This document shows, one piece after another, positions 4,058 through 63,393 of a DNA stretch of 64,000 nucleotides. Source of the DNA: Macrostomum lignano. Taxonomy: Eukaryota. The notes below the pieces were generated by a model. That model searched no databases. It had not been told where the DNA came from and saw only the letters and a list, made by a program, of their open reading frames with translations. Both the position numbers and the translations under genes were made by a program. Position 1 is the first letter of the stretch. Every line of letters starts with the position of its first letter. The stretch spans positions 62,001-126,000 of the forward strand of contig NIVC01000672.1 of the NCBI GenBank assembly GCA_002269645.1, given 5' to 3'.

Positions 4058-5298
4058 CTATTGACTGCGCTGAGCCTGCTGCACCTGCTGCTGGAGTTGC
4101 TGCACCTGCTGCTGGAGCTGCTGCACCTGCTGCAGGAGCTGCTCGACGCTCCTCGTCCGCTCGTCCAGTCCGCTCAGCAGAGTCCGCAGCTGCGAGACGC
4201 CTCCGAACCTGTCAGCCATCTGCTCGAGCTCCATAGTGCTGTGAGCCCAGTTCGCCACGTTGACCTGCAGCTTCTTGAACTGCTCGAAGACGCTGCCGAC
4301 TCGCCTCTTCACGTCGGCCACCTCGAGACCGTCGGCGGTTGTGACGGCGGGAGCTGCGGAACCTACATAAGACTGCGGCACGGCGGCTGCTGAAAATAGG
4401 AAAAAAAAATAAACCACAGAACAGCATCTTCTGCGTGATTTTATTACTGATTTTGACACCAGTTCTTACAGGGACTCTGCTGAGCTATTGCTGCCTGCTT
4501 GAGTTTTGAGTCCATGAGCTCAAGGTGAGAGTCCACGCTCTCCCTGTAGTGCCTCTCCAGATCGGACCTGCGCACCATCGCCCTGCAGCCCAGGTGAGAG
4601 TACTTGCACTCTACCGGTCTCTCGGGACACTCCGACAGGTGAGCAACATATCCCCGCCTGTCCATCGGTGTGCTCCGCTCCGAGCAGTGAGGACAGCGAG
4701 CTGAGAATCTCGGACAGCACACATCGGACTGCAGATTCCTGTGACTGGTCTCCATCTCGCTGTGTGTGACCAGCTGAGAGCACAGGTCGCAGGTCTCCTT
4801 CCTGTGGCGACACTCGCTGCTGGTGTGTCGCTGCATGTCCTTCTTCAGGATGAGCTCTTTGCACTGCTCACAGCGGAGTGAGTGCCAGTCGCAGCTCTGT
4901 TGCACATGCTGGTCTATGCGAGCCCATTCCAGTTGGACAGAGCAGCCGGCGTCGCAGTTCGGACAGCGGACTCGCAGCTTGGCGACCTCGCGTCTAGTCG
5001 CCATGTCGGGAAAGCAGGTAGCATGGCTCACCTCGGTCTCGACATCGCCGCCGCTGCCACCGCCGCCAACGTCCTCCTCCGAGTGGTGGTCTCTGAGTGT
5101 GCAGGCCTCGGTGTGTCCGGGACAGGGCCGCTTCTCCACCTCGTGCAGCAGGCCGGTGACGCAGGCCTGGCACAGGCGGCACCCGTGCGGAGTCTGTCGG
5201 GCGTTGAAGAGCGGCTTGGAGCAGCTGCTGCACTGCAGGTGAGCCGGCAGAGCGGAGACCGGCCTCGCAACCGACACACTCGAAGGCAGCTCCGACAT
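4058..5298 (-). CDS. TRAF-like copy 1: RING + zinc fingers + coiled coil, no MATH (exons 5298-4470, 4389-4058; 386 aa)
   Basis: ATG 5298; phase-1 donor CCC T|GTAAGA; acceptor ttttcag|CA; in-frame join to the coiled-coil exon ending LQQQVQQAQRSQ*. TRAF-type fingers such as CEQCKELILKKDMQRHTSSEC and CKYSHLGC...ERH...HLELM. Confidence 0.88.
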
Positions 5299-5716
5299 TG
5301 TTGTCCAAACGTCCTAAGAGTCAGACTGCAATTTAAAAGTGGCATGCAAATATTTTTTATGAGCGTGGTGCCCAGACAGAGAGGGATCGAAGACGGAATA
5401 TTTAAATTGACGGAAAGCGTCGATCAAGGCAGCCTCCTTATTTGATTTATGCCTGCAATAAAATCGTTCCATAGTTTTATATGAAGCAGAAATAGGATTT
5501 TTGAGGCACAAATTTTGGTATTAATACTGGTAGCTTTTTAGGTATTTATAGTAGATCAAGTCTGCAATTTTACTGAAAACTTCTAATGGCTACTCTAAAA
5601 TTGATCGTGATTGATGTATTTCTAGCACGATTCTATCATTTTCTGCGGTTTTGTAAACTCGCGAGGCGGCAACTCGGCAGGGCATTCAGTTTTCAGGACT
5701 AAAAATAGTTTTCCTT

Positions 5717-6122
5717 TCAACATTAAATTAATTCAATTGAACTACGCGTTTCGCATGATACTGTGCATCTTTAGGTTTATTTTTTAGCGAAAGAAACGAG
5801 TGAGATCGGCAGTAAACAAATACAAAATTTCGGGGTGCAAATTCAATCAATATTTGAAGTACATGTTTGTTGGTCCAAAAGTCGAGAGGAAAAGTCCAGG
5901 GACGGAATGATAGCGATATAGTTTGAAGTACATAATGTACATACAGTGTCCCCTCCCTCAGAACACACGGAGAACAAATTCAAAAATATTGATTGAATTT
6001 GCACCCCGAAATTTTGTATTTATTTACTGCCGATCTCACTCGTTTCTTTCGCTCAAAAATAAACCTAAAGATGCACAGTATCGTGCGAAACGCGTAGTTC
6101 AATTGAATTAATTTATTGTTGA
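5717..6122. mobile_element. Foldback/MITE-like element, arms about 145 bp, spacer about 115 bp
   Basis: 5717-5860 is the near-perfect reverse complement of 5978-6122 (caattgaactacgcgtttcgc...gcaaattcaatcaatattt). No clear TSD found. Confidence 0.8.
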
Positions 6123-6269
6123 TTTTTGCCTTCCTATTCATCATACTTGCCAAGCGAGCAACTTTACCTGAGTTTTCCTTTCTGTCGATATTTCACTGCA
6201 AATGGCGAGTTTCTGTGCCGGCTAAAGGATAAATTTGAGCTCTCTGTCATCAGTTATTCGCTCAGTTCA

Positions 6270-6625
6270 GGTATCAGACAGAGCAGCTCAGCGTTAAACG
6301 CGTCTGATTCGTGTCACGACCCCTGGTTCGATTCCTCTCGGCTTGTGCGTTTGTGATTAAATTGACTGAGTTATTGTCATGCAATTCATACGAGGTACTT
6401 ATGAGGGCCAGCCAACGATGTACACTCGGTACACGCTACACCCTGTGTGAGCTGAGTGCACGAGTGCGTGCCTGTGTGTGGTATTGGCGCGCTTGTATTT
6501 GCTTGGGAGTCTGCGGAATGGGCAGAATGTCCTCAGCGCTGGTTGGGTTGTGCAGACGATGCCGCCGAGAGCGTTGCAACAGGGTGCCCCACAGCCCTCC
6601 TGCATCCTTCATCAGCCCTTATTGT
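6270..6625 (+). mobile_element. tRNA-headed SINE-like element
   Basis: B-box GGTTCGATTCC at about 6324 with an A-box-like agctcagcg upstream. Body (gggagtc..cggaatgg.cag...cagggtgc.cacagccctc) is shared with minus-strand copies at about 9690, 23150 and 44570. Confidence 0.55.
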
Positions 6626-7217
6626 GATTTGCGAGTGTAGCCCAAACCCTCCAGCGATTATTCATGAAATTTCCCGCAGATGTACTTTCTGTTGGGGCTG
6701 CTTTCAACCTGGAGACCCGGGGCTGGCAGGGTGGGCGATGGGAGCGCAGGTGCAGTGGGCGATGCTGAGCTTAATTTTTTATCCCTTTCAGCAAATACTG
6801 AAGTATGATTATAACAGAGAAGCCACGCACTTGCTTCCTGCTTGAGTTGAGTTCGAGCTCGGCAGCCAACTTCAGGTCGCAGTCCGCCTGGCCTGGCTGC
6901 TCTGGCTGGCGGCTGCTTAAAATAGACATTTCTGTCACATGATTTGTTGGAACTGTACAATAACCAAAGTTTTTTCCATGGAAAATCCGTGCGGTAGAGA
7001 GCTGCGACCGTGGCAAAAACATGGCTCTCAGGTGTATTTTCGTTTCTATTTTTGTTCTGTACAGTACAATACAATGTCAAGTATTTTGATTGTATGCTTA
7101 GCGTTGTTTACAAATTATAAAATCAATCGTACACTATAATAAGTCAGTTGTCAGGCAATTTACGCTCCTATTTAACATTTGTACAAGAAGTGCCGCGCGT
7201 CTTTGAGCGGTGCGGCG

Positions 7218-12113: not shown

Positions 12114-13353
12114 TCAAGCTCTCTGTTGCAGCTGCTGCACCTGCTGCTGGAGCTGCTGCACCTGCTGCTGCAGCTGCTCGACGCTCCTTGTCCGCTCGTC
12201 CAGTCCGCTCAGCAGAGTCCGCAGCTGCGAGACGCCTCCGAACCTGTCAGCCAGCTGCTCGAGCTCCATGGTGCTGTGAGCCCAGTTCGCCACGTTGACC
12301 TGCAGCTTCTTGAACTGCTCGAAGACGCTGCCGACTCGCCGCTTCACATCGGCCACCTCGCGACCGTCGGCGGTAGTGGCGGTGGGAGCTGCGGCACCGA
12401 CAGAGGACTGCGGGACCGCAGCTGCTGGAAATGAACAATTAAACATTATTGCAATAGCGACCAACAAAACATTCGCATCCAACCACCTTAATGTATTAGC
12501 GCACATTGATCTTTGCTATTATTCAACAGAAAAGCTTACCAGAATTCGATGGAACAACAGCTGCCTGCTTGAGCTTCGAGTCCATGAGCTCAAGGTGAGA
12601 GTCCATGCTGTCCCTGTAGTGCCTCTCCAGATCGGACCTGCTTACCATCTCCCCGCAGCCCAGGTGAGAGTACTTGCATTCTACCGTTCTCTCGGGACAC
12701 TCCGACAGGTGAGCAACATATCCCCGCCTGTCCATCGGTGTGCTCCGCTCCGAGCAGTGAGGACAGCGAGCTGAGAATCTCGGACAGCACACATCGGACT
12801 GCAGATTCCTGTGACTGGTCTCCATCTCGCTGTGTGTGACCAGCTGAGAGCACAGGTCGCAGGTCTCCTTCCTGTGGCGACACTCGCTGCTGGTGTGTCG
12901 CTGCATGTCCTTCTTCAGGATGAGCTCTTTGCACTGCTCACAGCGGAGTGAGTGCCAGTCGCAGCTCTGTTGCACATGCTGGTCCATGCGAGCCCATTCG
13001 AGTTGGACAGAGCAGCCGGCGTCGCAGTTCGGACAGCGGACTCGCAGCTTGGCGACCTCGCGTCTCGTCGCTATGTCGGGATAGCAGGTAGCTCGGCTCA
13101 CCTCGGTCTCGACCCCGCCGCCAACGTCCTCCTCCGAGTGGCGGTCTCTGAGTGTGCAGGCCTCGGTGTGTCCGGGACAGGGCCGCTTCTCCACCTCGTG
13201 CAGCAAGCCGGTGACGCAGGCGTGGCACAGGCGGCACCCGTGCAGAGTCTGTTGGGCGTTGAAGAGCGGCTTGGAGCAGCTGCTGCACTGCAGGTGAGCC
13301 GGCAGATCGGAGACCGGTCGGGCTCCCGACACTCGCTCTGGAAGTTCTGACAT
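12114..13353 (-). CDS. TRAF-like copy 2: RING + ZF + coiled coil, no MATH (exons 13353-12540, 12424-12114; 374 aa)
   Basis: ATG 13353; donor TCT G|GTAAGC; acceptor catttccag|CA; ends LQQRA*; AATAAA on the minus strand at 11835-11840. Confidence 0.88.
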
Positions 13354-15656: not shown

Positions 15657-18600
15657 ATGTCAGGACTTCCTCAGCGAGTGTCGGCAGCCCGACCGGTCTC
15701 CGATCTGCCGGCTCACCTGCAGTGCAGCAGCTGCTCCAAGCCGCTCTTCAACGCCCGACAGACTCCGCACGGGTGCCGCCTGTGCCACGCCTGCGTCACC
15801 GGCCTGCTGCACGAGGTGGAGAAGCGGCCCTGTCCCGGACACACCGAGGCCTGCACACTCAGAGACCACCACTCGGAGGAGGACGTCGGCGAAGTCGAGG
15901 TCGAGGTGAGCCAGGCTACCTGCTTTCCCGACATGGCGACGAGACGCGAGGTCGCCAAGCTGCGAGTCCGCTGTCCGAACTGCGACGCCGGCTGCTCTGT
16001 CCAACTCGAATGGGCTCGCATGGACCAGCATGTGCAACAGAGCTGCGACTGGCACTCACTCCGCTGTGAGCAGTGCAAAGAGCTCATTCTGAAGAAGGAC
16101 ATGCAGCGACACACCAGCAGCGAGTGTCGCCACAGGAAGGAGACCTGCGACCTGTGCTCTCAGCTAGTCACACACAGCGAGATGGAGACCAGTCACAGGA
16201 ATCTGCAGTCCGATGTGTGCTGTCCGAGATTCTCAGCTCGCTGTCCTCACTGCTCGGAGCGGAGCACACCGATGGACAGGCGGGGATATGTTGCTCACCT
16301 GTCGGAGTGTCCCGAGAGACCGGTAGAGTGCAAGTACTCTCACCTGGGCTGCAGGGCGATGGTGCGCAGGTCCGATCTGGAGAGGCACTACAGGGAAAGC
16401 ATGGACTCTCACCTTGAGCTCATGGACTCGAAACTGAAGCAGACAGCGATATCTCATTCGAATTCCGGTATGTCAGTATTGTGTCGGGTTAATGGATTTT
16501 TTTGTTGAGACAAATTTTATGCACTGCTACTCCAAAAATTTTATTTTTTGGTCAGCTGTTTTCAGTGGCCGATGGCAGTTTATGGACGCTCCTGTGGGCG
16601 ACCGAAGCCGACACGACGCACAGCTGGCCTCCGTGCCGCGAGACCCCGGCCAAGATCCGGTAGAATCGCCTGTGAGCTCTGAATCGTTCCTTCACAGGCC
16701 GCATGCGTTGGGTGGAGCTCTGCAGTTGCAGAATGTGAGCTGCTTTGCGATTTTTTAACTCATTTGCATCTTTATTCATTTAGACGAAAGTCCTGTCACT
16801 GAGCCCATTCCACATTTTTAGCCAATTTGCAACTCCATTGCTGCCGACTCGCCTGTCCGAATGCTGGGCAGGCCGAAACAGCTGCTGTCCGAGCTGGTGT
16901 TCAGTCGGGGCCATGCTGGCCGAGTCACGTCTGCCTGCTCTCTAGACGGGCGGCAGATTTTTGTTTCGGGAGGCGCGGACGGAATCGCGGTGCTGTGGCA
17001 CCTCGGCTCAATGCGTCTCCAGAGTCGAGTCCGGGCCCCTGCGAGTTGGGGTTCAATCACCTGTCTGGTGTCTCCGGCATCTGACATTCTGTTGGCCGGC
17101 TGGGAGAATCTGAATGGACTCGTGCGACTCCGGTGCCCGGAGGGGTATCTGTGCGACACTGATGCTGAGCTGGAGCACCTCTTGAGCACTGGACAGGCGG
17201 AGCTGCTTCAAGGCAACTCACCTGTGGCGGCCATGTGCACAGTTCCCGAATCTGCTGAGGTCATTGTCGCCCTCACCAACAGAAGCCTCGCACTGGTGCC
17301 AGCCGAAGGAGGTCTTCAGCCGCTGGTTGGGCTCACCGGTTTCGACCCTCTGGCTGGCCCGCCGGTGTTTTTGCGGATTCTGGAGCCCGGGTGGCTGCTG
17401 GCATGCCAGCTCAGTAGCCCTGTGCTCCGCTCCGCTCAGCTGCACACGGCTCAGGATGGCAGGATGGCTGTCAGCGGCTGGCGAACCTTCCAGTGCTTCG
17501 ACGAGATGGCGGCGGATGCTTCTCCAGTGATTCGGGCGTGCGCTGCAGGCTGCGGTCCCGGAGTTGCCATTGTGGCGTTTCGGTGCCAAAGTCGCAATCG
17601 GATCGCCATCGTTAAACTCGGCTCCGATGCGAAAATTCATCCCGTCTTGACGGGTTTTATGGTGAATGTGTTTCTTTTTAATATTTGATGTCTGAATTTC
17701 TAACCTTATAATATTGCTTCAAGTTGCTGCATGCTGAAGTTCAATTCTGAAACTGAGGATGTTTTCCATTTTTCACCAAATTCACCCAGAACTTCCTCAA
17801 GATTTCACCCCGATCTCACCCCGATCTCACCCCGATCTCACCCCGATCTCACCCCGATCTCACACCGATCTCACCCTGATCTCACCCCGATCTCACCCCG
17901 ATCTCACCCCGATCTCACCCCGATCTCACCCCGATCTCACCCCGATCTCACCCCGATCTCATCCCGATTTCATCACGATCTCACCCCGATTTCATCCCGA
18001 TCTCACACTGATCTCACCTCGATCTCACCCCGATCTCACCCCGGTTTCACCCTGATCTCACACCGAACTCACCCCGATCTCACCCCGATCTCATCCCGAT
18101 CTCACCCCGATCTCACCCCGATCTCACCCCGATCTCACCCCGATCTCACCCCGATCTCACCCCGATCTCACCCCGATTTCATCCCGATCTCACACTGATC
18201 TCACCTCGATCTCACCCCGATCTCACCCCGGTTTCACCCTGATCTCACACCGAACTCACCCCGATCTCACCCCGATCTCATCCCGATCTCACCCCGATCT
18301 CACCCCGATCTCACCCCGATCTCACCCCGATCTCATCACGATCTCACCCCGATCTCACCCCGATTTCATCCCGATCTCACACCGATCTCACCTCGATCTC
18401 ACCCCGATCTCACCCCGGTTTCACCCTGATCTCACACCGAACTCACCCCGATCTCCCTGCGATTTGTCTCCCTTTCCGCAGTGCCACACCCGGCCGATAC
18501 GAGCCATCAGCCTGCTGACGAGCGACCTCACGGGCGCCCTGCCGCTCCTGGCCACGGCCTCTGCTCAAGGGAAAGTCAGCGTTTGGCGCATGCAGAGCGG

Positions 18601-18857
18601 GGTCAATCAGCTGGCTGAGGTCAGGCATCATGCAGTCATTTTTCGTTTCGCTTCTAATCAAACTTCTCGCCAATTTCTAACCCGCCCCTGCCACTCAGGT
18701 TTCTCACTTCGAGCACGGCCACGAGGTTACCACCCTGGGGCTGCACCTCACAGCCACCGACCGGCCTCTGCTGCTTGTCGGGGATGCTGGCGGGAACACC
18801 TTCTCTCTGGAGCTTCCTTGGCTTGATGCGAACGCATTTCATCAGACTGCATTTTGA
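15657..18857 (+). CDS. TRAF-like copy 3: RING + ZF + linker + WD40-like propeller (exons 15657-16467, 16556-16734, 16822-17661, 18482-18619, 18699-18857; 708 aa)
   Basis: All four introns are GT-AG with phases 1,0,0,0 and the joined frame is open. WD-like repeats SRGHAGRVTSAC...VSGGADGIAVLW and CHTRPIRAI...LATASAQGKVSVW. Confidence 0.85.
17796..18452. repeat. 11-bp minisatellite (ctcaccccgat)n in intron 3, with a 187-bp higher-order period
   Basis: Variant ggtttcaccctg recurs at 18043, 18230 and 18417. Confidence 0.95.
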
Positions 18858-25856: not shown

Positions 25857-27145
25857 TCAGGCTCGATGTCGCTGCAGCTCCTGCACCTGCTGCTGGAGCT
25901 GCAGCACCTGTTGCTGCAGCTGCTCGACGCTCCTCGTCCGCTCGTCCAGTCCGCTCAGCAGAGTCCGCAGCTGCTCGACGCTCCTCGTCCGCTCGTCCAG
26001 TCCGCTCAGCAGAGTCCGCAGCTGCGAGACGCCTCCGAACCTGTCAGCCAGCTGCTCGAGCTCCATGGTGCTGTGAGCCCAGTTCGCCACGTTGACCTGC
26101 AGCTTCTTGAACTGCTCGAAGACGCTGCCGACTCGCCGCTTCACGTCGACCACATCGCGTCCATCGGTGGCTGTGGTGGCAGGAACTCCGGTACCGACAG
26201 AAGAATGCGGGACCGCGGATGCTAAAAGTTTAAAAAAATTAATTTAATATCCGAGAATACGTTCGTAGCCGCTTTTACTGCATAACCACTTTACTGGTTT
26301 AGAAAGCAAATCTTACCAGGACTCTGCTGAGCTATCGCTGTCTGCTTCAGTTTCGAGTCCATGAGCTCAAGGTGAGAGTCCATGCTTTCCTTGTAGTGCC
26401 TCTCCACATCGGACCTGCGCACCATCGCCCTGCAGCCCAGGTGAGAATACTTGCACTCTACCGGTCTCTCGGGACACTCCGACAGGTGAGCAACATATCC
26501 CCGCCTGTCCATCGGTGTGCTCCGCTCCGAGCAGTGAGGACAACGAGCTGAGAATCTCGGACAGCACACATCGGACTGCAGATTCCTGTGACTGGTCTCC
26601 ATCTCGCTGTGTGTGACCAGCTGAGAGCACAGGTCGCAGGTCTCCTTCCTGTGGCGACACTCGCTGCTGGTGTGTCGCTGCATGTCCTTCTTCAGGATGA
26701 GCTCTTTGCACTGCTCACAGCGGAGTGAGTGCCAGTCGCAGCTCTGTTGCACATGCTGGTCCATGCGAGCCCATTCGAGTTGGACAGAGCAGCCGGCGTC
26801 GCAGTTCGGACAGCGGACTCGCAGCTTGGCGACCTCGCGTCTCGTCGCCATGTCGGGAAAGCAGGTAGCATGGCTCACCTCGGTCTTGACCTCGCCGCCG
26901 CTGCCACCGCCGCCAACGTCCTCCTCCGAGTGGTGGTCTCTGAGTGTGCAGGCCTCGGTGTGTCCGGGACAGGGCCGCTTCTCCACCTCGTGCAGCAGGC
27001 CGGTGACGCAGGCCTGGCACAGGCGGCACCCGTGCGGAGTCTGTCGGGCGTTGAAGAGCGGCTTGGAGCAGCTGCTGCACTGCAGGTGGGCCGGCAGATC
27101 GGAGACTGGCCGGGCTCCCGACACACTCGAAGGCAGCTCGGACAT
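25857..27145 (-). CDS. TRAF-like copy 4: RING + ZF + coiled coil (exons 27145-26317, 26221-25857; 397 aa)
   Basis: Donor CCT G|GTAAGA; acceptor cttttag|CA; the coiled coil carries a 51-bp internal duplication (LRTLLSGLDERTRSVEQ twice); ends LQRHRA*. Confidence 0.88.
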
Positions 27146-32800: not shown

Positions 32801-32864
32801 GAACACCTTCTCTCTGGAGCTTCCTTGGCTTGATGCGAACGCATTTCATCAGACTGCATTTTGA
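29838..32864 (+). CDS. TRAF-like copy 5: RING + ZF + WD40-like (exons 29838-30651, 30740-30918, 31006-31845, 32489-32626, 32706-32864; 709 aa)
   Basis: Same splice sites as copy 3 (exons 2-3 offset by 14184 bp); open joined frame. Confidence 0.85.
31985..32440. repeat. (ctcaccccgat)n-type intronic minisatellite, more degenerate copy
   Basis: Lies in intron 3 of copy 5. Confidence 0.9.
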
Positions 32865-43486: not shown

Positions 43487-43496
43487 CTGTGAAATT

Positions 43497-46594: not shown

Positions 46595-47815
46595 TCAGGC
46601 TCGATGTCGCTGCAGCTGCTGCACCTGCTGCTGGAGCTCCTGCACCTGCTGCTGCAGCTGCTCGACGCTCCTCGTCCGCTCGTCCAGTCCGCTCAGCAGA
46701 GTCCGCAGCTGCGAGACGCCTCCGAACCTGTCAGCCAGCTGCTCGAGCTCCATGGTGCTGTGAGCCCAGTTCGCCACGTTGACCTGCAGCTTCTTGAACT
46801 GCTCGAAGACGCTGCCGACTCGCCGCTTCACGTCGACCACATCGCGTCCATCGGTGGCTGTGGCGGCAAGAGCTCCGGCACCGACAGAAGACTGCGGGAC
46901 CGCAGATACTAAAAGTATAAATTTTTTTTTAATATCCGAAAATACGCTCGTAGCAGCTTTTTCTGGTTAACCAATTTACTGATTTGGAAAGCAAATCTCA
47001 CCAGGACTCTGCTGAGCTATCGCTGCCTGCTTCAGTTTCGAGTCCATGAGCTCAAGGTGAGAGTCCATGCTTTCTCTGTAGTGCCTCTCCAGATCGGACC
47101 TGCGCACCATCGCCCTGCAGCCCAGGTGAGAGTACTTGCACTCTACCGGTCTCTCGGGACACTCCGACAGGTGAGCAACATATCCCCGCCTGTCCATCGG
47201 CGTGCTCCGCTCCGAGCAGTGAGGACAGCGAGCTGAGAATCTCGGACAGCACACATCGGACTGCAGATTCCTGTGACTGGTCTCCATTTCGCTGTGTGTG
47301 ACCAGCTGAGAGCACAGGTCGCAGGTCTCCTTCCTGTGGCGACACTCGCTGCTGGTGTGTCGCTGCATGTCCTTCTTCAGGATGAGCTCTTTGCACTGCT
47401 CACAGCGGAGTGAGTGCCAGTCGCAGCTCTGTTGCACATGCTGGTCCATGCGAGCCCATTCGAGTTGGACAGAGCAGCCGGCGTCGCAGTTCGGACAGCG
47501 GACTCGCAGCTTGGCGACCTCGCGTCTCGTCGCCATGTCGGGAAAGCAGGTAGCCTGGCTCACCTCGACCTCGACCTGGCCGCTAGCGTCCTCCTCCGAG
47601 TGGTGGTCTCTGAGTGTACAGGCCTCGGTGTGTCCGGGACAGGGCCGCTTCTCCACCTCGTGCAGCAGGCCGGTGACGCAGGCCTGGCACAGGCGGCACC
47701 CGTGCGGAGTCTGTCGGGCGTTGAAGAGCGGCTTGGAGCAGCTGCTGCACTGCAGGTGAGCCGGCAGATCGGAGACCGGCCGGGCAGCCACGACACTCGA
47801 AGGCAGCTCGGACAT
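46595..47815 (-). CDS. TRAF-like copy 6: RING + ZF + coiled coil (exons 47815-47002, 46908-46595; 375 aa)
   Basis: Donor CCT G|GTGAGA; acceptor cttttag|TA; TGA TGA followed immediately by AATAAA (46587-46592). Confidence 0.9.
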
Positions 47816-48354
47816 GGCGGTTGAAGCAGTGAACTGTTTTCAAACGTTTTCAATTGTCAGTCTTAAATATGTTGCCTTCACTTTACTAGGGTTACTGCTA
47901 ATGCCACAGGGTTCTACCTAAACTCTTCAGTACTGTCTACTGTACTGCAGCTCTTCCTCTGAATAAGGTTGTTCATATCGCGTGCGTTGCTTCCTTGTTA
48001 AAGGCTTCTGTGATTCTGTTTATAGGCTTTATGAGTTACGGTTCTCGTTTTATTACTATTACTCAATTTTCGTTTTTCATTTTTCAATTTACTCACACAT
48101 CACTGACTACTCACCGTTAGTGTAGAAGAAAGCTTTAGTTTTAAGTAGAAGGTTTCATGTTTCAGGAAGAACTTTGATCAATTTCGCTTCTTTTACGTTG
48201 CTGATGTACACTGAGTAGCGTGAGCAGTGCGATGCATTTGTTGGCCATGTACTCACTCAGCTTCTGATAGTTTTTTTTGAGATTGAGCATCTCATTGTAA
48301 TTTCTATAAATAGCTCAGGCAATTTTTATAAACGGCTTGAAGGTAAAACGTAGT

Positions 48355-50675: not shown

Positions 50676-50934
50676 TTTTAGACGTTTTGTAAAAAAGGAA
50701 AACTTCATCTAAAATGAAAACGCCTATAAACAGAATCACAGGCAGCCTTTATCAAGGAAGCAACGCACGCCATATGAACAACCTTATAAGAGGAAATAAC
50801 TGCAGTACAATAGACAGTACTGAAGAGTTCAGGTAGAACCCTGTGGCATTAGCAGTAACCCTAGTAAAGTGAAGGCAGCCTATTTAGAACTGACAATTAA
50901 AAACGTTTGAAAACAGTTCACTGCTTCAACCGCC

Positions 50935-53402
50935 ATGTCCGAGCTGCCTTCGAGTGTGACGGCCGCACGGCCGGTCTCCGATCTGCCGGCCCACCTGCAG
51001 TGCAGCAGCTGCTCCAAGCCGCTCTTCAACGCCCGACAGACTCCGCACGGGTGCCGCCTGTGCCACGCCTGCGTCACCGGCCTGCTGCACGAGGTGGAGA
51101 AGCGGCCCTGTCCCGGAAACACCGAGGCCTGCACACTCAGAGACCACCACTCGGAGGAGGACGCTGGCGGCGAGGTCGAGGTCGAGGTGAGCCAGGCTAC
51201 CTGCTTTCCCGACATGGCGACGAGACGCGAGGTCGCCAAGCTGCGAGTCCGCTGTCCGAACTGCGACGCCGGCTGCTCTGTCCAACTCGAATGGGCTCGC
51301 ATGGACCAGCATGTGCAACAGAGCTGCGACTGGCACTCACTCCGCTGTGAGCAGTGCAAAGAGCTCATCCTGAAGAAGGACATGCAGCGACACACCAGCA
51401 GCGAGTGTCGCCACAGGAAGGAGACCTGCGACCTGTGCTCTCAGCTGGTCACACACAGCGAGATGGAGACCAGTCACAGGAATCTGCAGTCCGATGTGTG
51501 CTGTCCGAGATTCTCAGCTCGCTGTCCTCACTGCTCGGAGCGGAGCACACCGATGGACAGGCGGGGATATGTTGCTCACCTGTCGGAGTGTCCCGAGAGA
51601 CCTCGTGGCGCTTCGATCGCACCTCAGCGCCAAATTGCCTCTTCTCAACGGCTGCAGCGAGCTATTGGTAAGTGAAACATTTTTAAATACAAATTTATGT
51701 CATGTGTGTTTCTGGCTTCAATTTTCTGAAAAGTAGCAAACTATTCAACTTCACGGATTCTCAGGCAACTCTGGGAGCCGACCAGCGCGTGACTCCGCCA
51801 CGGACAGCAGCAGAATTTTGTTTGACGAAAGGCTGACTGATTCGCCGCAGGAGCCTGTCCAGGATCCAGCAGCGCCTTCAGCGAATTTTATTGCAACCGG
51901 CGGGTCGATTGCGACGCAACATTTTCCTCTTCCTTTTGGTGGAGCCGAACAAGTGCATGTTGTAAGACTTGCAAGTACACTGTGTTCGTAGCTTAGCCAG
52001 TACATTGTGTTAGCTTAGCAAGTACACTGTGTTAGCTTAGCAAGTGTAGTTTGTTAGCTTAGCAAGTGCAGTGTGTTAGCTTTTTCGCCTTCAACTTGCA
52101 GCCCGTTCGCGACCCCGAGTCGTCTGACCGCCCAGTGCAGTTGCTGCATCCTTCAAACTTGCCACCCGCTGAGCTGGGCTTCAGCCGAGGTCACAGCAGT
52201 CGAGTCGCCGCAGTCTGCCGTCTTGGAAACATTTCTTTTGTTGCCACTGGCGGCGCGGACGGGTCCGTGCTGCTGTGGCACCTGGACTCCATGTGTCTGC
52301 AGCATCGAATGCTGGCGCCATCAGCTTGGGGAGCCGTGACCCATCTGAACTCGCCGACGGGTAGCCTTCTGTTGCTCAGCTGGCAGCAGCGGACAGGCCT
52401 GGTCAGAATCCGCTGTGGGCAGCTCCTACTTCAAGGCATTGAGTCGCTTCTGCGTGACATGTTGAATGCCGGAGTCGCAGAGCTGCTGGACAGCCACTCG
52501 CCCGTGACAGCCCTCTGCCCCATCCCTGAGAATCACGCGGCAGTCGTAGGCTTTGAAGATTCCACTTTGGCTTTGGTGGCAGCGCAGGGCAGTTTCGTCG
52601 CCCTTCGGCACCAAAGTGCCGGCGACCTGGATGCGACGGCTGGGCCGCCGGTGCTTCTGCGGATCGTGGAGCCGGGCTACATGCTCTGCTTGCAGCTCGG
52701 CAACCCCAGGCTTTACTTGGCGACGCTGCGCACCGCGTTGCCGGGTCCTGCCATTGTTGGAGGCTGGCGAGCTTCAGACCGACTCGACTTGCTGGACGAA
52801 GCTGCGGCCTTGCTGCAGGCATTCGCTGCCGGCGACTTGCCCGGAGAAGCCTGTCTGATATTCCCTTGTGGGATACCCGGGCGGATCTCGGTGCTCAGAG
52901 TGGACTCCAACATGCAGCTCTGCCCAGTGGTCAGCAGATTTCTGGTAAGCTTTTTGAACAGCTGCAGAGAATTTCAACGTCTTGAAAATCTGACCTCAGA
53001 AGAAATATTTGATCGCACTGTGCTCACCGCCCGTTGCAGTGCCACGCGCAGCCAATCACCGCCCTCTGCCGGCTGACGGACGATCTGAGCGGCGCCCTGC
53101 CGTTCCTCGCCACGGCCTCGGCCGGCGGGGAAGTCAGCGTCTGGCGCATGCAGGCCGGAGCTGCACTGAACCAGCTCGCTGAGGTGCGGCTTAAAATCTC
53201 CCTCATGAGCTTCTATCGCATTGTGTTTTTTATTATCAGAATATTTCGAACCCTGCAATTTTTGCAGGTGTCGCACTTCAAGCACAGCTGCGAAGTTACT
53301 ACGATGAAGCTGCTGTCATTCGATGCTCAGCTGCATCTGCTTGTCGGAGATGCTCGGGGCAACGTTTTCTGCCTGAAGTTGCCAGTTGGTTCAAGCTTGT
53401 AA
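50935..53402 (+). CDS. TRAF-like copy 7: RING + ZF (last finger lost) + divergent WD40-like propeller (exons 50935-51667, 51765-51961, 52102-52944, 53040-53183, 53268-53402; 683 aa)
   Basis: ATT G|GTAAGT, tctcag|GC, GTT|GTAAGA, ttgcag|CCC, CTG|GTAAGC, tgcag|TGC, GAG|GTGCGG, ttgcag|GTG; phases 1,0,0,0; open joined frame. Confidence 0.83.
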
Positions 53403-56435: not shown

Positions 56436-56489
56436 TCGGAACTGGGAATGTAGTGGAGGTGAGTCAAATTTCAGTTACAACAGCATTTT

Positions 56490-58168: not shown

Positions 58169-58999
58169 CTGTACTCCGCTGAGCTATCACGGCCTGTCAG
58201 AGCCTCGAGTCCATGAGCGCAAGGTGAGAGTCCACGCTGTCGATGTGGTGCCTCTCCAGATCGGACCTGCGCACCATCGCCCTGCAGCCCAGGTGAGAGT
58301 ACTTGCACTCTACCGGTCTCTCGGGACACTCCGACAGGTGAGCAACGTAAGCACGTCAATCCAGTTTTTTTCTACTGTTGCAGTGAGGACAGCGAGCAGA
58401 GTATCTCGGACAGCACACATCGGACTGCAGATTCCTGTGACTGGTCTCCATCTCGCTGTGTGTGACCAGCTGAGAGCACAGGTCGCAGGTCTCCTTCCTG
58501 TGGCGACACTCGCTGCTGGTGTGTCGCTGCATGTCCTTCTTCAGAATGAGCTCTTTGCACTGCTCACAGCGGAGTGAGTGCCAGTCGCAGCTCTGTTGCA
58601 CATGCTGGTCCATGCGAGCCCATTCGAGTTGGACAGAGCAGCCGGCGTCGCAGTTCGGACAGCGGACTCGCAGCTTGGCGACCTCGCGTCTCGTCGCCAT
58701 GTCGGGAAAGCAGGTAGCCTGGCTCACCTCGATCTCGACCTCGCCGCCGCCAACGTCCTCCTCCGAGTGGTGGTCTCTGAGTGTGCAGGCCTCGGTGTGT
58801 CCGGGACAGGGCCGCTTCTCCACCTCGTGCAGCAGGCCGGTGACGCAGGCCTGGCACAGGCGGCACCCATGCGGAGTCTGTCGGGCGTTGAAGAGTTGAA
58901 GGCGTTGAACTGGGCGTTGGAGCAGCAGCTGCACTGCAGGTGAGCCGGCAGATCGGAGACCGGCCGGGCTTCCGACACACTCGAAGGCAGCTCGGACAT
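58169..58999 (-). pseudogene. TRAF-like copy 8 exon 1 (pseudogene)
   Basis: Frameshifting micro-duplication in the RING (ttcaacgcc repeats, about 58890-58920); in-frame TGA at 58356-58358 and at about 58198-58200; phase-1 donor ACA G|GTAAAT retained. Confidence 0.88.
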
Positions 59000-59194: not shown

Positions 59195-59330
59195 TGCGAG
59201 GAGAGCAGCAGGCTGGTGACGCAGGTCTGGCGCAGGCGGCACCTATGCGGAGTCTCTTGTAAGTTGAAGAGCGGCTTGGTGCAGAGTGGATATACAAATG
59301 TAGGGTGGTTGGAGCAGTGAACAGCAATTA
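59195..59330 (-). pseudogene. Old diverged RING relic
   Basis: LCTKPLFNLQETPHRCRLRQTCVTSLL versus CSKPLFNARQTPHGCRLCQACVTGLL. Confidence 0.75.
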
Positions 59331-59619
59331 TAAGGTCTATTCGATTGATTTCCTTTTGTTCGATCCAGTTGTTTAGCAGTTCTGCAGTGAGTTTTTTATG
59401 GCTATTGTGGAAGAATTGAGGGACCTTGGAGATAAAAGTATACGGAGGAACAAGTTTCATTGTTTCCACGGATTTTTTGTTGAACTGACTTTTTGTATTC
59501 AAAGTGGTTTTCTTCAAATGAAGCAAACCTTTTCCATCTGCTTACAAAGATTTTGCCTAAAGTTTTCTGCGGATTCAGTTTTGTCTTTTCCTAATCTTGG
59601 GTATCAAGTGGTAGGTGGC

Positions 59620-60157: not shown

Positions 60158-62140
60158 GAGTGTTTCAGCAGACTTCATAGTTTTTACCGAGAAGAACGGC
60201 AAGAAGCAGCTGTCAAACAGCTTGGGAGTTGTTCAAAGTTAGCTCCAACGTCATGTTTAATTTTAGACGGCTCAAGTGCTGTCTGTTCAGATTAATTTGC
60301 AGTTGGTCTGAGTCATGCAGTTCAATAAAATGATATACAAAATAGATACGAGTGTACTGGGACTAAAAAATGGTACTATAGCTCTTATTTTTATGGAAGA
60401 CGTGGGTTCTAAATCGGTATTCTTGTTTGCTTAACGACAGGAGATCCCTAAACCAATGTTCAATGGCGTTTTCATTTTCAAAGCACTTGCGACGCTGAAA
60501 GCTACTACGAGTAGTACCTTGTTTTATTTCGGTTCAACCATGCCATCCATAATTTTATCAAATTTGCCGACAGTTTTCGTTTCTGCTGTCAGTACGAGAG
60601 GTGTTGCTCTGACCAAATGAGAAAACAGTAATGCCCATTTGAGCTGAGATTTGAGCCAAAGCACAAAGCCAAAGCAGCAAAATTAATTGGTAAAACTGCA
60701 AATCGATTCTGCTAAGAAAAACTTAGATATTAAAGTTTTAAGCGTTGGTTTCTTACATGACTTTCCAATTTGAGCAACCCAATTAGTGCTGCTATTTTTC
60801 TCATGAAAGCTCTGCATGCGAAAGTCGGGGCGTTTCCCCAATTCGTAATACCAAGACAGACTAAATGTCCTTAAGGCAGAATATTAAAAACAAACTCGCT
60901 CATGGTTTGCACAGAAATAGAACCCCACGCAGTTCCCCGAAATAGCGCGTCAAGGTACTTCTGACTGTAACTACAGTGCCAGTAGAACAAGTTTGTAACT
61001 CTGCTCATATTATACTCGTACATGTATACTCGCATTCCTTATTCTGGCATAAATATGGCAATTATAGTTTCTAATAACAGTGGGATGATTTTTCTGAGCC
61101 AGAGACAAGTGATCCCATTTGATTTGTCTCAAAAGTAGCAGGCAGGTTGTGCTGCAAACAGCCAGCATGACAAATGGATTGAGGCCTGTGATACTTGAAC
61201 ATGTATTCCTATCGAAGCGAACGCACGAGCGAACAAAATCTGTTTTTTAAAAGAAGAGCAACAAAGCATAAAAAACTTATAAAAATCATAAAACAGTCTG
61301 ACGCATTGGACAAAAAAGAATGTTAAACTACCGGCCTGCATTGAAGCTACTATTGAAGAGTAAAAATAAACCTTGTTTTATTTTAAATTCACACGCAATA
61401 GCTAAAATTAAACATTTTTTAACAAATTAGGTAGAATTTTATGCGGAAAACAGAACGCTTATAAAAAGAAACATTCGTTATGGTGGTTCTCAATGTTACG
61501 AGTGCAGTTGAATGTGCAATTCTTTACTAATTTAATTTTTACGAATGTATCAATCGAGTGCATTGGAATTTCAGTTTTTATATTGGCTCTCAGATCTGAA
61601 GGCGGCAGTGTCATTCTAACTTTTGGTTCACTTTCACTTGCAGCAAACGGTTCAACTATTCACTCTGAAATTTAGTTCAATGCGAAAGTCGTCAAATTTA
61701 CGCAGCCCTCGTACCCGAAAATGAACTGCGAAATGCACGAAACAATTCCCGAATCCACTTGTTCGTCTTTCAGTAGAGCTGTGTCGTTCAAAGTCTAAAA
61801 ATAGAACAGGGAAATCCCTGCCCAGAGCACTCTCTAACTTTCTATTATTAAAAAAGCAGAAACCAGAACTGACAAAAAATCATTTATATTTTTTATAATA
61901 CGACAAACTGCCTCGCATAGTGAAAAGTGCCCACATCATGCACACAATTCAAGAATGCACATAATTAGTAATTCAGAGCTTGCTTCAGACCTGTACGCTT
62001 GTACACTTGTATAAAATGAATTCGGAACAGCATCAAACAGGAATTCAAACATAAACTGACAAATTTTGTTCAAAAATCCGGCAGTATCATTGCAACAGCT
62101 TATTTATTTTATCAGAAACATTAAACCCTCTCTGTGAGAC

Positions 62141-63393
62141 ATGTCCCAGTTGGAACTTCCCCAAAGAGTGTCGGTCGCCAGGCCAGTCTCCAATCTGCCG
62201 GCTCACCTGCAGTGCAGCAGCTGCTCCAAGCCGCTCTTCAACGCCCGACAGACTCCGCACGGGTGCCGCCTGTGCCAGGCCTGCGTCACCGGCCTGCTGC
62301 ACGAGGTGGAGAAGCGGCCCTGTCCCGGACACACCGAGGCCTGCACACTCAGAGACCACCACTCGGAGGAGGACGTTGGCGGCGGCGAGGTCGAGATCGA
62401 GGTGAGCCAGGCTACCTGCTTTCCCGACATGGCGACGAGACGCGAGGTCGCCAAGCTGCGAGTCCGCTGTCCGAACTGCGACGCCGGCTGCTCTGTCCAA
62501 CTCGAATGGGCTCGCATGGACCAGCATGTGCAACATAGCTGCGACTGGCACTCACTCCGCTGTGAGCAGTGCAAAGAGCTCATTCTGAAGAAGGACATGC
62601 AGCGACACACCAGCAGCGAGTGTCGCCACAGGAAGGAGACCTGCGACCTGTGCTCTCAGCTGGTCACACACAGCGAGATGGAGACCAGTCACAGGAATCT
62701 GCAGTCCGATGTGTGCTGTCCGAGATTCTCAGCTCGCTGTCCTCACTGCTCGGAGCGGAGCACACCGATGGACAGGCGGGGATATGTTGCTCACCTGTCG
62801 GAGTGCCCCGAGAGACCGGTAGAGTGCAAGTACTCTCACCTGGGCTGCAGGGCGATGGTGCGCAGGTCCGATCTGGAGAGGCACTGCAAGGACAGCGTGG
62901 ACTCTCACCTTGAGCTCATGGACTCGTTTATGCAGTTCATTGTCTTTCGTATCTTCATACTTCGGTCTCATGGTGAGTTTTCTGTTGGGAGTAATAAAGT
63001 GTCTGCTTTAGGAATTTATTAGTCTATTTCGACTCTTCATAGTACTACAGTGTGTACCCAATCGCTGCGCTGCTACATTGATTCTAGAACCATCAGCTGA
63101 TGAGAGTCCGCAGCGGTCCCATCGCTATTTAGTCACATCGGCTCAGGATTCCATCACCAGTGCCGCAGTGTCTGTTGATCAGCTGCTTTATTCGGTGGGT
63201 TGCAGTTTTGCATGCAGTTTTTATGTTGAATATCCTATATACTAAAAATGGTCTGTCTTTGATTTCTAAAAAACGGCCCACGCTGTCTTTTCAGCTGTCC
63301 GAGCTGCAAACAGCCGACTCTCCTGTGCGACTCTACTCCACACCGGTGCTACCCATGTGCGAGCTCCAGCTTCATCCTTTGCAGTTTTCTTAG
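62141..63393 (+). CDS. TRAF-like copy 9, WD40-class but truncated (exons 62141-62972, 63088-63194, 63295-63393)
   Basis: Phase-1 donor CAT G|GTGAGT; phase 1-0 linker exon (ttctag|AA...TCG|GTGGGT); exon 3 LSELQTADSPVRLYSTP..CEL matches AADSPVRMLGRP..SEL of the other WD exons, then stops at TAG. Confidence 0.6.

What the first reader, a model, noticed from the sequence alone, without database searches (positions are those of the whole stretch)
4470..62972. TRAF exon 1 is homogenised (gene conversion) while the attached C-termini are strongly diverged
Seen: a 134-aa stretch (CFPDMATRRE...CPERP) is identical in copies 3, 4, 6 and 7 and differs by only a few residues in copies 1, 2, 5 and 9. Yet WD exon 3 of copies 3 and 7 is only about 45% identical over its first ~105 aa (hand count). 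Similarity tracks physical pairing. Copies 4/5 share about 200+ bp of inverted upstream sequence (aaaatggctatataggactta...gaacttgcagttcactgc), and 6/7 share a different version (ccctagtaaagtgaaggca...tttgaaaacagttcactgc). Copies 8/9 share the GGGEVEIEV loop, 2/3 share P[EQ]RVS, LCHAC and SNSG, and 5/6 share ASGQVEVEV. Inference: arm-to-arm conversion between inverted copies keeps a constant signalling module on variable recognition modules.
Basis: partly seen in the sequence, partly recalled or inferred. Interest (0 to 1): 0.8.

Follow-up and report, generated by a model that had tools for sequence, protein, structure and literature searches.

The report
Homogenised first exon in flatworm TRAF cluster
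A flatworm (Macrostomum lignano) gene cluster holds at least 14 copies of a TRAF6-like first exon that stay almost identical in DNA while the rest of each gene has diverged, which is a clear but conceptually familiar case of DNA copying between neighbouring gene copies (gene conversion).

Summary
The window is Macrostomum lignano contig NIVC01000672.1, positions 62001-126000. It holds nine copies of an ~810-bp first exon encoding a TRAF6-like RING plus TRAF zinc fingers. Five more copies lie just to the left.

Exon 1 is 95-98% identical in DNA among the intact window copies. A 402-nt core differs by 0-6 nt among 11 copies. Similarity stops within about 20 nt of the ATG and the splice donor.

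The same genes are old paralogues elsewhere:
- Copy 7's WD-like exons differ from copies 3/5 at dS 0.6-2.2, against dS 0.04-0.09 in exon 1.
- Copy e's coiled-coil exon differs at dS 0.7-1.0, against 0.02 in exon 1.

Recombination tests, triplet breakpoints inside exon 1 and a 36:0 site pattern upstream show mosaic histories. Non-allelic gene conversion or recombination is therefore well supported.

- Homogenisation is cluster-wide, not only between inverted arms.
- It also covers the coiled-coil core of exon 2.
- The C-terminal parts fall into only two classes, each with two subtypes.

One caveat stands: the assembly was Pilon-polished with Illumina and RNA-seq reads. This may exaggerate the core identity, and I could not check it against reads.

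It is a new example of a known process, of moderate interest.

The parts
4470..5298 (-). Copy 1, exon 1 (RING + TRAF zinc fingers). It belongs to a two-exon coiled-coil (CC1) gene.
   Evidence: ORF. It is 100% identical to UniRef protein P0001 over 281 aa, spliced to exon 2.
4058..4389 (-). Copy 1, exon 2 (linker plus Q-rich coiled coil, ending in a stop codon).
   Evidence: Splice junction from P0001. ORF and stop codon. The homogenised ~230-nt core is shown.
12540..13353 (-). Copy 2, exon 1 (CC1 gene).
12114..12424 (-). Copy 2, exon 2 (coiled coil).
15657..16467 (+). Copy 3, exon 1 (WD1-type five-exon gene).
   Evidence: The junction to exon 2 is given by P0006.
16556..18857 (+). Copy 3, exons 2-5 (16556-16734, 16822-17661, 18482-18619, 18699-18857): WD-like C-terminal part.
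   Evidence: Exons mapped with P0006 and P0008. The spliced frame is open. A single sub-threshold WD40 repeat is present.
26317..27145 (-). Copy 4, exon 1 (CC1 gene).
25857..26221 (-). Copy 4, exon 2 (coiled coil with an internal 51-nt duplication).
27146..27252 (-). Upstream arm of copy 4, shared in inverted orientation with copy 5.
29732..29837 (+). Upstream arm of copy 5, the inverted partner of copy 4's arm.
29838..30651 (+). Copy 5, exon 1 (WD1 gene). It is a chimera: like copies 4/6 at the 5' end and like copy 3 at the 3' end.
   Evidence: Triplet breakpoints lie at 240-513.
30740..32864 (+). Copy 5, exons 2-5 (30740-30918, 31006-31845, 32489-32626, 32706-32864).
   Evidence: Mapped with P0007 at 96-99% identity. 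The spliced frame is open.
47002..47815 (-). Copy 6, exon 1 (CC1 gene).
46595..46908 (-). Copy 6, exon 2 (coiled coil).
47816..48030 (-). Upstream arm of copy 6, shared in inverted orientation with copy 7.
50718..50934 (+). Upstream arm of copy 7.
   Evidence: copy 7 matches copy 6 from -212 onwards.
50935..51667 (+). Copy 7, exon 1 (WD2 gene). Positions 50935-51602 are homogenised. The last 65 nt (51603-51667) are unrelated to the other copies.
   Evidence: dS to copies 3/5/6 is 0.04-0.09.
51765..53402 (+). Copy 7, exons 2-5 (51765-51961, 52102-52944, 53040-53183, 53268-53402): an old WD-like paralogue with the same intron phases as copies 3/5.
   Evidence: dS 0.6-2.2, amino-acid identity 32-72% to copies 3/5. 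It is absent from the protein database.
58169..58999 (-). Copy 8, an exon-1 pseudogene (17-nt insertion, replaced patch, stop codons). No exon 2 was found.
59205..59284 (-). Degenerate fragment of the RING-coding part of exon 1 (85% identity over 80 nt).
62141..62956 (+). Copy 9, exon 1. Its 3' end diverges after ...LELMDS. The donor site and downstream exons were not identified within the window.

Best explanation
The locus is a lineage-specific cluster of at least 14 TRAF6-like genes in Macrostomum lignano. They share an ancestral first exon (RING plus TRAF-type zinc fingers, ending in a phase-1 intron). That exon is joined either to a short coiled-coil second exon (types CC1 and CC2) or to four exons encoding a WD-like domain (types WD1 and WD2).

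The gene lineages are old. Repeated non-allelic homologous recombination nevertheless keeps the domain-coding blocks nearly identical. This is mostly short-tract interlocus gene conversion, together with crossovers or rearrangements whose breakpoints fall inside exon 1. The homogenised blocks are exon 1 in all gene types and the coiled-coil core of exon 2 within the CC1 genes.

Introns, linkers and flanks accumulate substitutions and indels. These end the homology and so bound the conversion tracts. Inverted neighbours additionally exchange 100-215 bp of upstream sequence.

Shown here: the identity pattern, the dS contrasts, the mosaicism and the breakpoints.

Inferred: the molecular mechanism (double-strand-break repair using a paralogous template), and any selective reason for it, such as keeping a common E3-ligase or oligomerisation module compatible across paralogues.
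For: 1. Exon-bounded identity. Identity is 93-99.5% inside exon 1 and random outside it. For most of the 91 pairs, similarity ends within about 20 nt of the ATG and of the donor.

2. Within-gene dS contrasts. For copy 3 or 5 versus copy 7, exon 1 has dS 0.04-0.09 while exons 2-5 have dS 0.6-2.2. For d versus e, exon 1 has dS 0.024, while e's coiled-coil core differs from the CC1 genes at dS 0.7-0.97. Core dS averages 0.025 (maximum 0.05) across 12 copies.

3. Block structure in the CC1 genes. The exon-1 core and the exon-2 core have dS 0-0.13. Between them, intron 1 is 55-68% identical against 50-60% for shuffled controls, and the linker has dS 0.3-1.4. A single duplication event cannot produce this pattern.

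4. Exon 1 is not intrinsically slow. A diverged relative (L004) lies at dS ~0.5 and dN ~0.22 from every copy.

5. Mosaicism. PHI p=0.002. There are 195-345 site pairs failing the four-gamete test, giving Rmin 15-22. Copy d is e-like at the 5' end and b-like at the 3' end. Copy 5 is 4/6-like then 3-like. Copy 6 is 7-like then 4-like. All breakpoints lie inside exon 1, with Fisher p from 1e-32 to 1e-82. The upstream quartet splits 36:0. Copy f carries a 60-nt patch with about 20 differences inside an otherwise near-identical core.

6. Shared ancestry. The phase-1 intron sits at the same position in all gene types, and copy 7 has homologous exons 2-5. This points to shared ancestry rather than capture of a foreign exon.

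7. Structural variation. A second contig (L003) carries the same exon 1 e (99.4% identical) joined to a CC1-type exon 2 instead of a CC2-type one. This is a rearrangement at inverted exon-1 copies.
Against: No read-level validation was possible. The assembly (Canu on PacBio reads) was polished with Pilon using Illumina and RNA-seq reads (PMC5730564). This could have erased some true copy-specific differences in the most similar exonic stretches.

A GC-biased-conversion signature is not clear. GC3 is 0.72-0.90 in the homogenised blocks, 0.66-0.69 in WD exon 3, and 0.78-0.80 in unrelated neighbouring genes.

No orthologous cluster from a sister species was available, so the classical test (paralogues grouping by species) rests on one 1.2-kb contig of unknown species.

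Conversion cannot be cleanly separated from crossover or segmental duplication with breakpoints inside exon 1.
Confidence: 0.75

Rival explanations
1. Assembly or polishing artefact. Canu read correction and Pilon polishing with multi-mapping Illumina and RNA-seq reads pushed similar exonic stretches of all copies towards a family consensus. On this view the near-identity, especially of the 402-nt core, is exaggerated or false.
For: The assembly was polished with Pilon using Illumina and RNA-seq reads. The homogenised blocks are exonic. The core is star-like, with copies a and d equal to the consensus.
Against: Copy-specific substitutions and indels survive throughout exon 1, including the loop indels, the tail differences and 1-3 private sites per copy in the core. 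Copy f's 60-nt patch also survives.

Copies 3 and 5 keep about 5% differences over 2.6 kb despite being cross-mappable.

Private residues of copy 1 recur in a protein from the other assembly, ML2 (P0001, 100% over 281 aa). Copies a, e and f recur at 99.2-99.4% on a second contig.

Polishing cannot make sequences alike unless they were already more than about 90% identical. The contrast with dS above 0.6 in the 3' exons would therefore remain.
Confidence: 0.1
2. Recent duplication and exon shuffling without conversion. A promoter-plus-exon-1 segment spread recently by segmental or inverted duplication, landing in front of older, unrelated or diverged 3' gene parts.
For: Exon-1 dS (0.02-0.17) is similar to the dS of the youngest whole-gene duplicates, copies 3/5 at ~0.05. 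Recent segmental duplication exists in the locus (19663-24540 versus 41397-45962, at 96-98% identity). Copy 7's exon 1 loses similarity abruptly at 51602.
Against: This needs many independent insertions, each ending within about 20 nt of the same ATG and the same phase-1 donor.

It cannot explain two homogenised blocks separated by a saturated intron and linker in the CC1 genes.

It cannot explain the multiple incompatible site patterns within 650 nt.

It cannot explain chimeras whose 5' and 3' halves have different closest relatives.
Confidence: 0.1
3. Purifying selection alone, on the protein, on codon usage or on an RNA or DNA element within exon 1, keeps the sequences alike without any exchange.
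For: The most conserved stretches coincide with folded domains (RING, zinc fingers, coiled coil), while the linkers vary. GC3 is high.
Against: Synonymous sites are also nearly invariant (core dS 0.025), while the same genes reach dS 0.6-2.2 elsewhere.

The same exon shows dS 0.5 and dN 0.22 against the diverged relative L004. It is therefore not under extreme constraint.

Selection does not produce mosaic breakpoints or pair-specific upstream blocks.
Confidence: 0.03

Closest known systems
Partial interlocus gene conversion in innate-immunity paralogues: mammalian TLR1/TLR6 (PMC2077338)
   Same: Tandem paralogues in which one region is kept nearly identical at the DNA level by repeated gene conversion while the other domains diverge. 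In TLR1/TLR6 that region covers LRR16-19, the transmembrane segment and most of the TIR domain. The authors interpret this as limiting divergence of a shared functional module.
   Different: Here there are at least 14 copies rather than 2. The homogenised module is the N-terminal RING/zinc-finger exon. The partners include inverted neighbours. The 3' parts are different domain types rather than diverged versions of one domain. Independent conversion in several species has not been shown.
Classical concerted evolution of tandem gene families with exon-limited tracts (for example globin genes). This comparison rests on my own knowledge and was not checked in a paper here.
   Same: Conversion tracts cover coding blocks and are bounded by diverged introns and flanks. 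Paralogues show mosaic similarity.
   Different: In this cluster, different gene architectures (coiled-coil tail versus WD-like domain) share the converted exon.
Arm-to-arm conversion in large palindromes (for example primate Y-chromosome palindromes). This comparison rests on my own knowledge.
   Same: Inverted repeats a few kb apart carry gene 5' ends. The pair-specific upstream sequence is shared by the two arms (36:0 informative sites).
   Different: The arms are only 0.9-1.1 kb long and 95.9-96.6% identical, not more than 99.9%. The arm is not each copy's closest relative inside exon 1. Exchange also involves copies that are not palindrome partners.
TRAF6 and TRAF7 (TNF-receptor-associated factors)
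   Same: Exon 1 aligns to the TRAF6 RING plus zinc fingers (PDB 5vo0, E 2.6e-9) and passes the Pfam zf-TRAF threshold. The RING - zf-TRAF - WD-like order of copies 3, 5 and 7 resembles the TRAF7 architecture.
   Different: No MATH/TRAF-C domain is present. The WD-like part has one sub-threshold WD40 repeat and no specific relatives outside M. lignano among 1.8 billion representative proteins. Orthology to TRAF7 is not shown.

Membership tests
TRAF family (TRAF1-6 type) | N-terminal RING finger followed by TRAF-type zinc fingers | tested here: met
   Pfam zf-TRAF scores 42.5 bits against a cut-off of 27. phmmer aligns residues 22-182 to the TRAF6 RING-ZF structures 5vo0, 8hz2 and 3hcs, with E 2.6e-9 to 9e-9.
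TRAF family (TRAF1-6 type) | C-terminal TRAF domain (coiled-coil TRAF-N plus MATH/TRAF-C) | tested here: not met
   No MATH hit was found in the Pfam scans of the exon-1, coiled-coil-exon and WD-exon ORFs. The CC1 genes end in a stop codon after a Q-rich coiled-coil exon. These genes are TRAF-like, not canonical TRAFs.
TRAF7-like (RING, zf-TRAF, WD40 propeller) | C-terminal multi-blade WD40 beta-propeller | tested here: inconclusive
   There is one WD40 repeat at 22.8-25.4 bits, below the cut-off of 27. The profile search finds only generic WD40 matches to profile positions ~29-63. The AlphaFold2 single-sequence model is all-beta but has pLDDT 39.7.
Concerted evolution by interlocus gene conversion | Segments of the same paralogues show strongly discordant divergence, including at synonymous sites | tested here: met
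   Exon 1 has dS 0.02-0.09, against dS 0.6-2.2 in the downstream exons of the same gene pairs. Intron 1 is near saturation between identical coding cores.
Concerted evolution by interlocus gene conversion | Mosaic sequences, phylogenetic incongruence and significant recombination tests | tested here: met
   PHI p=0.002 and Rmin 15-22. Triplet breakpoints have p from 1e-32 to 1e-82. The upstream quartet splits 36:0.
Concerted evolution by interlocus gene conversion | Paralogues within a species are closer to each other than to orthologues in a related species | tested here: inconclusive
   All copies are equidistant (dS ~0.5) from one diverged relative, L004, from run SRR24204725. The species of that run and its positional orthology are unknown.
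Concerted evolution by interlocus gene conversion | GC-biased composition of converted tracts | tested here: inconclusive
   GC3 is 0.72-0.90 in the converted blocks, 0.66-0.69 in WD exon 3 and 0.78-0.80 in neighbouring unrelated genes.
Concerted evolution by interlocus gene conversion | The identity is real in the genome, not produced by assembly or polishing | not testable with these tools
Pilon polishing with Illumina and RNA-seq reads is documented. Partial reassurance comes from the ML2-derived protein P0001 and the second contig L003.
Palindrome arm-to-arm conversion | The two inverted arms are each other's closest relatives along the whole arm, at near-complete identity | tested here: not met
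   Arm identity is 95.9% (copies 4/5) and 96.6% (copies 6/7). The arms are closest relatives only in the upstream 100-215 bp. Within exon 1, nearest relatives are often other copies.

The most novel reading that the evidence does not exclude
The inverted gene pairs act as a germline shuffling device. Recurrent conversion, crossover and inversion within the invariant exon 1 repeatedly re-pair one E3-ligase module, and the promoters attached to it, with alternative C-terminal modules. This would generate and maintain a combinatorial set of innate-signalling adaptors. The contig pair in which the same exon 1 carries either a CC1 or a CC2 second exon would be a snapshot of this process.
Probability: 0.07. 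Interest if true: 0.7.

Novelty: new member of a known kind. Interest (0 to 1): 0.35.

Why it matters
If the identity holds at read level, this is a clean invertebrate example of module-restricted concerted evolution: one E3-ligase exon kept uniform across genes whose other domains are non-homologous or anciently diverged.

It has three practical consequences.
- Trees built from the N-terminal region of these TRAF-like genes will badly underestimate the age of the gene lineages.
- Public gene models in this cluster are chimeric (see the noticed items).
- RNAi or CRISPR reagents aimed at exon 1 would hit the whole family at once, while the loop, tail and linker segments are the only copy-specific targets.

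It does not reveal a new mechanism.

Tried and rejected
- **GENECONV-like run-length test.** Almost every pair came out 'significant'. This is because copy f's clustered 23-nt patch and the invariant core create long shared runs. I discarded it as uninformative and relied on PHI, the four-gamete count and triplet breakpoints instead.
- **GC-biased conversion.** No clear signal relative to neighbouring genes.
- **Homeologue of copies 6/7.** The protein search with copy 7's WD exon returned nothing, so no second locus could be fetched for that part of the cluster.
- **WD-like domain identity.** The profile search of 1.84 billion representative proteins gave only generic WD40 repeat matches. The AlphaFold2 single-sequence model was too poor to search with (pLDDT 39.7).
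- **Glycine-rich (ALK_LTK_GRD) and 'X' ORFs as C-termini of the minus-strand TRAF genes.** I considered this and rejected it. The coiled-coil exon 2 ends in a stop codon, and database proteins end there.
- **Copy 7's last 65 nt of exon 1 as a diverged relic of the ancestral exon.** No convincing residual similarity was found, so this is left open.
- **Literature searches.** I found no report of gene conversion or concerted evolution in Macrostomum TRAF-like genes. The sequencing-run identifier of L004 appears in no paper.
- **Self-BLAST of the 96-kb merged region with permissive scoring.** It timed out because of tandem repeats. I replaced it with pairwise comparison of extracted gene regions.

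Full report
**Where the window comes from.** Window positions 1-15298 are 100% identical to locus L001. L001 is part of Macrostomum lignano assembly Mlig_3_7 (GCA_002269645.1), contig NIVC01000672.1. The window therefore corresponds to positions 62001-126000 of that contig. The best protein matches are M. lignano 'TRAF-type domain-containing' proteins. One of them (P0001) equals copy 1's exon 1 over 281 residues and continues into copy 1's second exon.

**Anatomy.** The anchor peptide ATRREVAKLRV occurs nine times:
- Copies 1, 2, 4, 6 and 8 lie on the minus strand.
- Copies 3, 5, 7 and 9 lie on the plus strand.
- This gives head-to-head pairs 2/3, 4/5, 6/7 and 8/9, with 2.3-3.1 kb between their start codons.

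Fetching the contig to the left (L002) added five more full copies, which I call a, b, d, e and f. A short degenerate fragment lies at window 59205-59284. There are thus at least 14 copies in 96 kb.

Exon 1 (~810 nt) passes the Pfam zf-TRAF threshold. It aligns to the RING plus zinc fingers of TRAF6 crystal structures, with E 2.6e-9. No MATH domain is present.

Database proteins and open frames define two architectures:
- **Two-exon genes.** Exon 1 is followed by a ~90-120-nt phase-1 intron and an exon encoding a linker plus a Q-rich coiled coil that ends in a stop codon. Type CC1 comprises a, b, d, f, 1, 2, 4 and 6. Type CC2 is copy e only, about 57% identical in protein.
- **Five-exon genes.** Exon 1 is followed, through the same phase-1 intron position, by four exons encoding a ~440-aa WD-like region. 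Type WD1 comprises copies 3 and 5. Type WD2 is copy 7.

Copy 8 is a pseudogene. The 3' part of copy 9 lies outside the window or was not recognised.

The glycine-rich (ALK_LTK_GRD) and 'X' ORFs between the TRAF genes are separate genes.

**Checking the observation.**
- The 134-aa stretch is identical in copies 3, 4, 6 and 7 (and in a and d). It has 1 change in copies 1, 5 and 9, and 3 changes in copy 2.
- WD exon 3 of copies 3 and 7 is 44.8% identical over the first 105 residues and 40.5% overall.
- The pair-specific upstream blocks are real. In the 110 nt before the ATG, 36 informative sites support (4,5)|(6,7) and none support the alternatives.

At DNA level, exon 1 differs at 12-33 of about 670 ungapped sites among the eight intact window copies. 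The 402-nt core differs by 0-6 nt among 11 copies. Mean pairwise identity falls to random level outside the exon. For most pairs, similarity ends within about 20 nt of the ATG and of the splice donor.

**Is exon 1 homogenised relative to the rest of the genes?** Yes, on four lines of evidence.

First, Nei-Gojobori estimates give:

| Comparison | Exon 1 dS | Other exons dS |
|---|---|---|
| Copies 3 vs 5 | ~0.05 | ~0.05 in every exon (recent whole-gene duplicates) |
| Copy 3 or 5 vs copy 7 | 0.04-0.09 | 0.6-2.2 in exons 2-5 |
| d vs e | 0.024 | e's coiled-coil core vs all CC1 genes: 0.7-0.97 |

Copy 7 has the same exon structure and intron phases as copies 3 and 5. It is therefore an old paralogue, not an unrelated gene that captured an exon.

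Second, a diverged relative found in a public sequencing run (L004, 63% protein identity) lies at dS ~0.5 and dN ~0.22 from every copy. Exon 1 is therefore not an intrinsically slow-evolving sequence. The copies coalesce more recently than the WD1/WD2 and CC1/CC2 splits.

Among the eight CC1 genes, a ~230-nt core of exon 2 is nearly identical (dS 0-0.13). The intron between the two exons, however, is 55-68% identical in most pairs, against 50-60% for shuffled controls. The linker at the start of exon 2 shows dS 0.3-1.4.

Judged by their introns, the CC1 genes fall into old lineages: {a,b,d}, {4,6}, {1}, {2} and {f}. Two near-identical coding blocks separated by saturated sequence cannot result from a single duplication. 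They require repeated, short, block-wise exchange.

Fourth, there is direct evidence of mosaicism:
- The pairwise homoplasy index is significant (p=0.002). Between 195 and 345 site pairs fail the four-gamete test, giving a minimum of 15-22 recombination events in 650-790 nt.
- Triplet analysis shows clear chimeras with breakpoints inside exon 1:
  - Copy d is e-like upstream and in the 5' exon, and b-like from position ~543-692 onwards.
  - Copy 5 is 4/6-like up to ~240-513, then 3-like.
  - Copy 6 is 7-like up to ~588-672, then 4-like.
  - Copy 7 is 6-like from -212.
- Copy f carries a 60-nt in-frame patch with about 20 differences inside an otherwise near-identical core. This is what a short unconverted or separately converted tract looks like.
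- A second contig (NIVC01001049.1, locus L003) is a homeologue or haplotype of the left end of the cluster. On it:
  - Copies a, e and f are 99.2-99.4% identical to their counterparts.
  - Copy b is absent.
  - A truncated d is fused to the antisense strand of a coiled-coil exon.
  - Exon 1 of e is joined to a CC1-type exon 2 (97-98% identical to d and b) rather than to the CC2 exon.

  If both contigs are correctly assembled, this shows recombination at inverted exon-1 copies re-pairing exon 1 with a different 3' exon.

**Does similarity track physical pairing?** Only partly.
- Upstream sequence does track pairing: 4/5, 6/7 and also d/e, which are tail-to-tail neighbours.
- For exon 1 itself, neighbours are not significantly closer than random orders (p=0.13).
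- For its first 300 nt, p=0.04. With the upstream 120 nt added, p=0.007.
- Several shared states join non-neighbours: the loop insertion in 1/4, the loop in b/e/8/9, and the loop in d/f.
- The core is star-like.

Exchange is therefore cluster-wide, with an added component between inverted neighbours at their 5' ends.

**Mechanism.** The best-supported account has three parts.
- **Cluster-wide exchange.** An old family with a common exon-intron plan exchanges short tracts by repair of breaks from paralogous templates, wherever enough homology remains.
- **Tract limits.** Constrained domain-coding blocks keep that homology. Unconstrained introns, linkers and flanks lose it through substitutions and indels, and so delimit the tracts.
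- **5'-end exchange between inverted neighbours.** Breakpoints or crossovers inside the invariant exon 1 join 5' halves (promoter plus 5' exon) that resemble the inverted neighbour to 3' halves that resemble same-type genes elsewhere.

The pattern is shown. The repair mechanism and any selective benefit, such as keeping a shared E3 or oligomerisation surface compatible, are inferred.

**Rival explanations.**
- **Assembly or polishing collapse.** This is a concrete concern, because Mlig_3_7 was built with Canu from PacBio reads and polished with Pilon using Illumina and RNA-seq reads (PMC5730564). It could exaggerate identity in the core. However, many copy-specific differences survive in exon 1. 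Copies 3 and 5 retain 5% differences. Copy 1's private residues recur in the ML2-derived protein. The second contig reproduces a, e and f. Polishing also cannot create the contrast with dS above 0.6 downstream.
- **Recent spread of an exon-1 segment without conversion.** This fails on the block structure of the CC1 genes, on the common boundaries and on the multiple incompatible site patterns.
- **Purifying selection alone.** This fails on synonymous sites and on the divergence from L004.

**Comparison with known systems.** The closest documented analogue is TLR1/TLR6. There, repeated gene conversion keeps a ~300-aa region identical between tandem paralogues while other parts diverge (PMC2077338). 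Exon-limited conversion in tandem families, and arm-to-arm conversion in palindromes, are related known processes. The strict palindrome criteria are not met here, because the arms are only 96% identical and are closest relatives only upstream.

As proteins, these are TRAF-like, with a TRAF6-type RING and zinc fingers, but not canonical TRAFs, since they lack MATH. Copies 3, 5 and 7 resemble the TRAF7 domain order. Their WD-like part has no specific relatives outside M. lignano, and the structure model was uninformative.

**Verdict.** The gene-conversion interpretation is supported in its core and needs the three corrections set out under the first-reader interpretation. It is a new, well-marked example of a known evolutionary process in a lineage-specific flatworm gene family. 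Interest is moderate, and read-level confirmation is still needed.

Noticed in passing
L002 10001-23933, L001 1946-22694, L003 10001-16725 (NCBI gene models P0002, P0003, P0005): The public gene models in this cluster span 7-14 kb and join exons from different copies. P0002 mixes residues of copies 1, f and e. P0005 reads from a truncated exon 1 into the antisense strand of a coiled-coil exon. The annotation of this family is chimeric.
   Followed up: partly
L003 14532-17621 versus merged L002/window coordinates 21226-26384: The second contig (NIVC01001049.1) differs structurally from the window's contig. It lacks copy b. It has a truncated copy d fused to the reverse complement of a coiled-coil exon. 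Exon 1 of e is joined to a CC1-type exon 2 instead of the CC2 exon. In the window's contig, e has a 1-nt deletion (a frameshift after SECP), but on this contig it is intact.
   Followed up: partly
L002 about 31500-31560 (copy f): A 60-nt in-frame patch (CCPLFLAYCPHCSYRSRKM) carries about 20 nucleotide differences inside an otherwise near-identical core. Copy 8 has a different replaced patch at an overlapping position (window about 58330-58370).
   Followed up: partly
window 1439-2206 (-) and 7218-7976 (-): There are two paralogous ORFs of ~250 aa, 43% identical, with no Pfam match. Each lies downstream of a CC1 gene (copies 1 and 2). Their divergence contrasts with the ~95% DNA identity of the adjacent TRAF genes.
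   Followed up: partly
window 19663-24540 and 41397-45962 (-): This is a recent segmental duplication (96-98% identity). It carries a gene with a weak PAN-like match and an ALK/LTK-type glycine-rich domain (Pfam PF12810, E 3e-9 to 5e-9). In the second copy, an 11-bp-period tandem array lies in an open frame encoding RETAERQQRDS-type repeats.
   Followed up: no
window 32952-40639 (+), with 35637-36851: A Ty3/Gypsy-type retrotransposon (protease, integrase, reverse transcriptase and RNase H by Pfam) lies immediately after the last exon of copy 5. It is interrupted by a PIF/Harbinger-type DDE transposase.
   Followed up: partly
window 17801-18455 and 31984-32444: Intron 3 of copies 3 and 5 holds an array of an 11-bp unit (GATCTCACCCC, 42-60 copies). 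Other large arrays lie at 9991-11724 (40 bp x 43), 24284-25231 (16 bp x 59), 55811-56434 (22 bp x 28) and 59615-60156 (28 bp x 19).
   Followed up: no
window 27146-27170, 29813-29837, 47816-47840, 50910-50934 and equivalents: Most copies have an AG preceded by a pyrimidine-rich stretch 5-25 nt before the ATG (for example ...TTGCAG|TTCACTGCTTCAACCGCC ATG in copies 4-7). The 5' limit of similarity may therefore coincide with a (trans-)splice acceptor. This was not tested.
   Followed up: no
window 50935-53402 (copy 7): The five-exon open frame of copy 7 has no counterpart in the 5.8-billion-protein collection. The gene appears to be unannotated in public records.
   Followed up: partly
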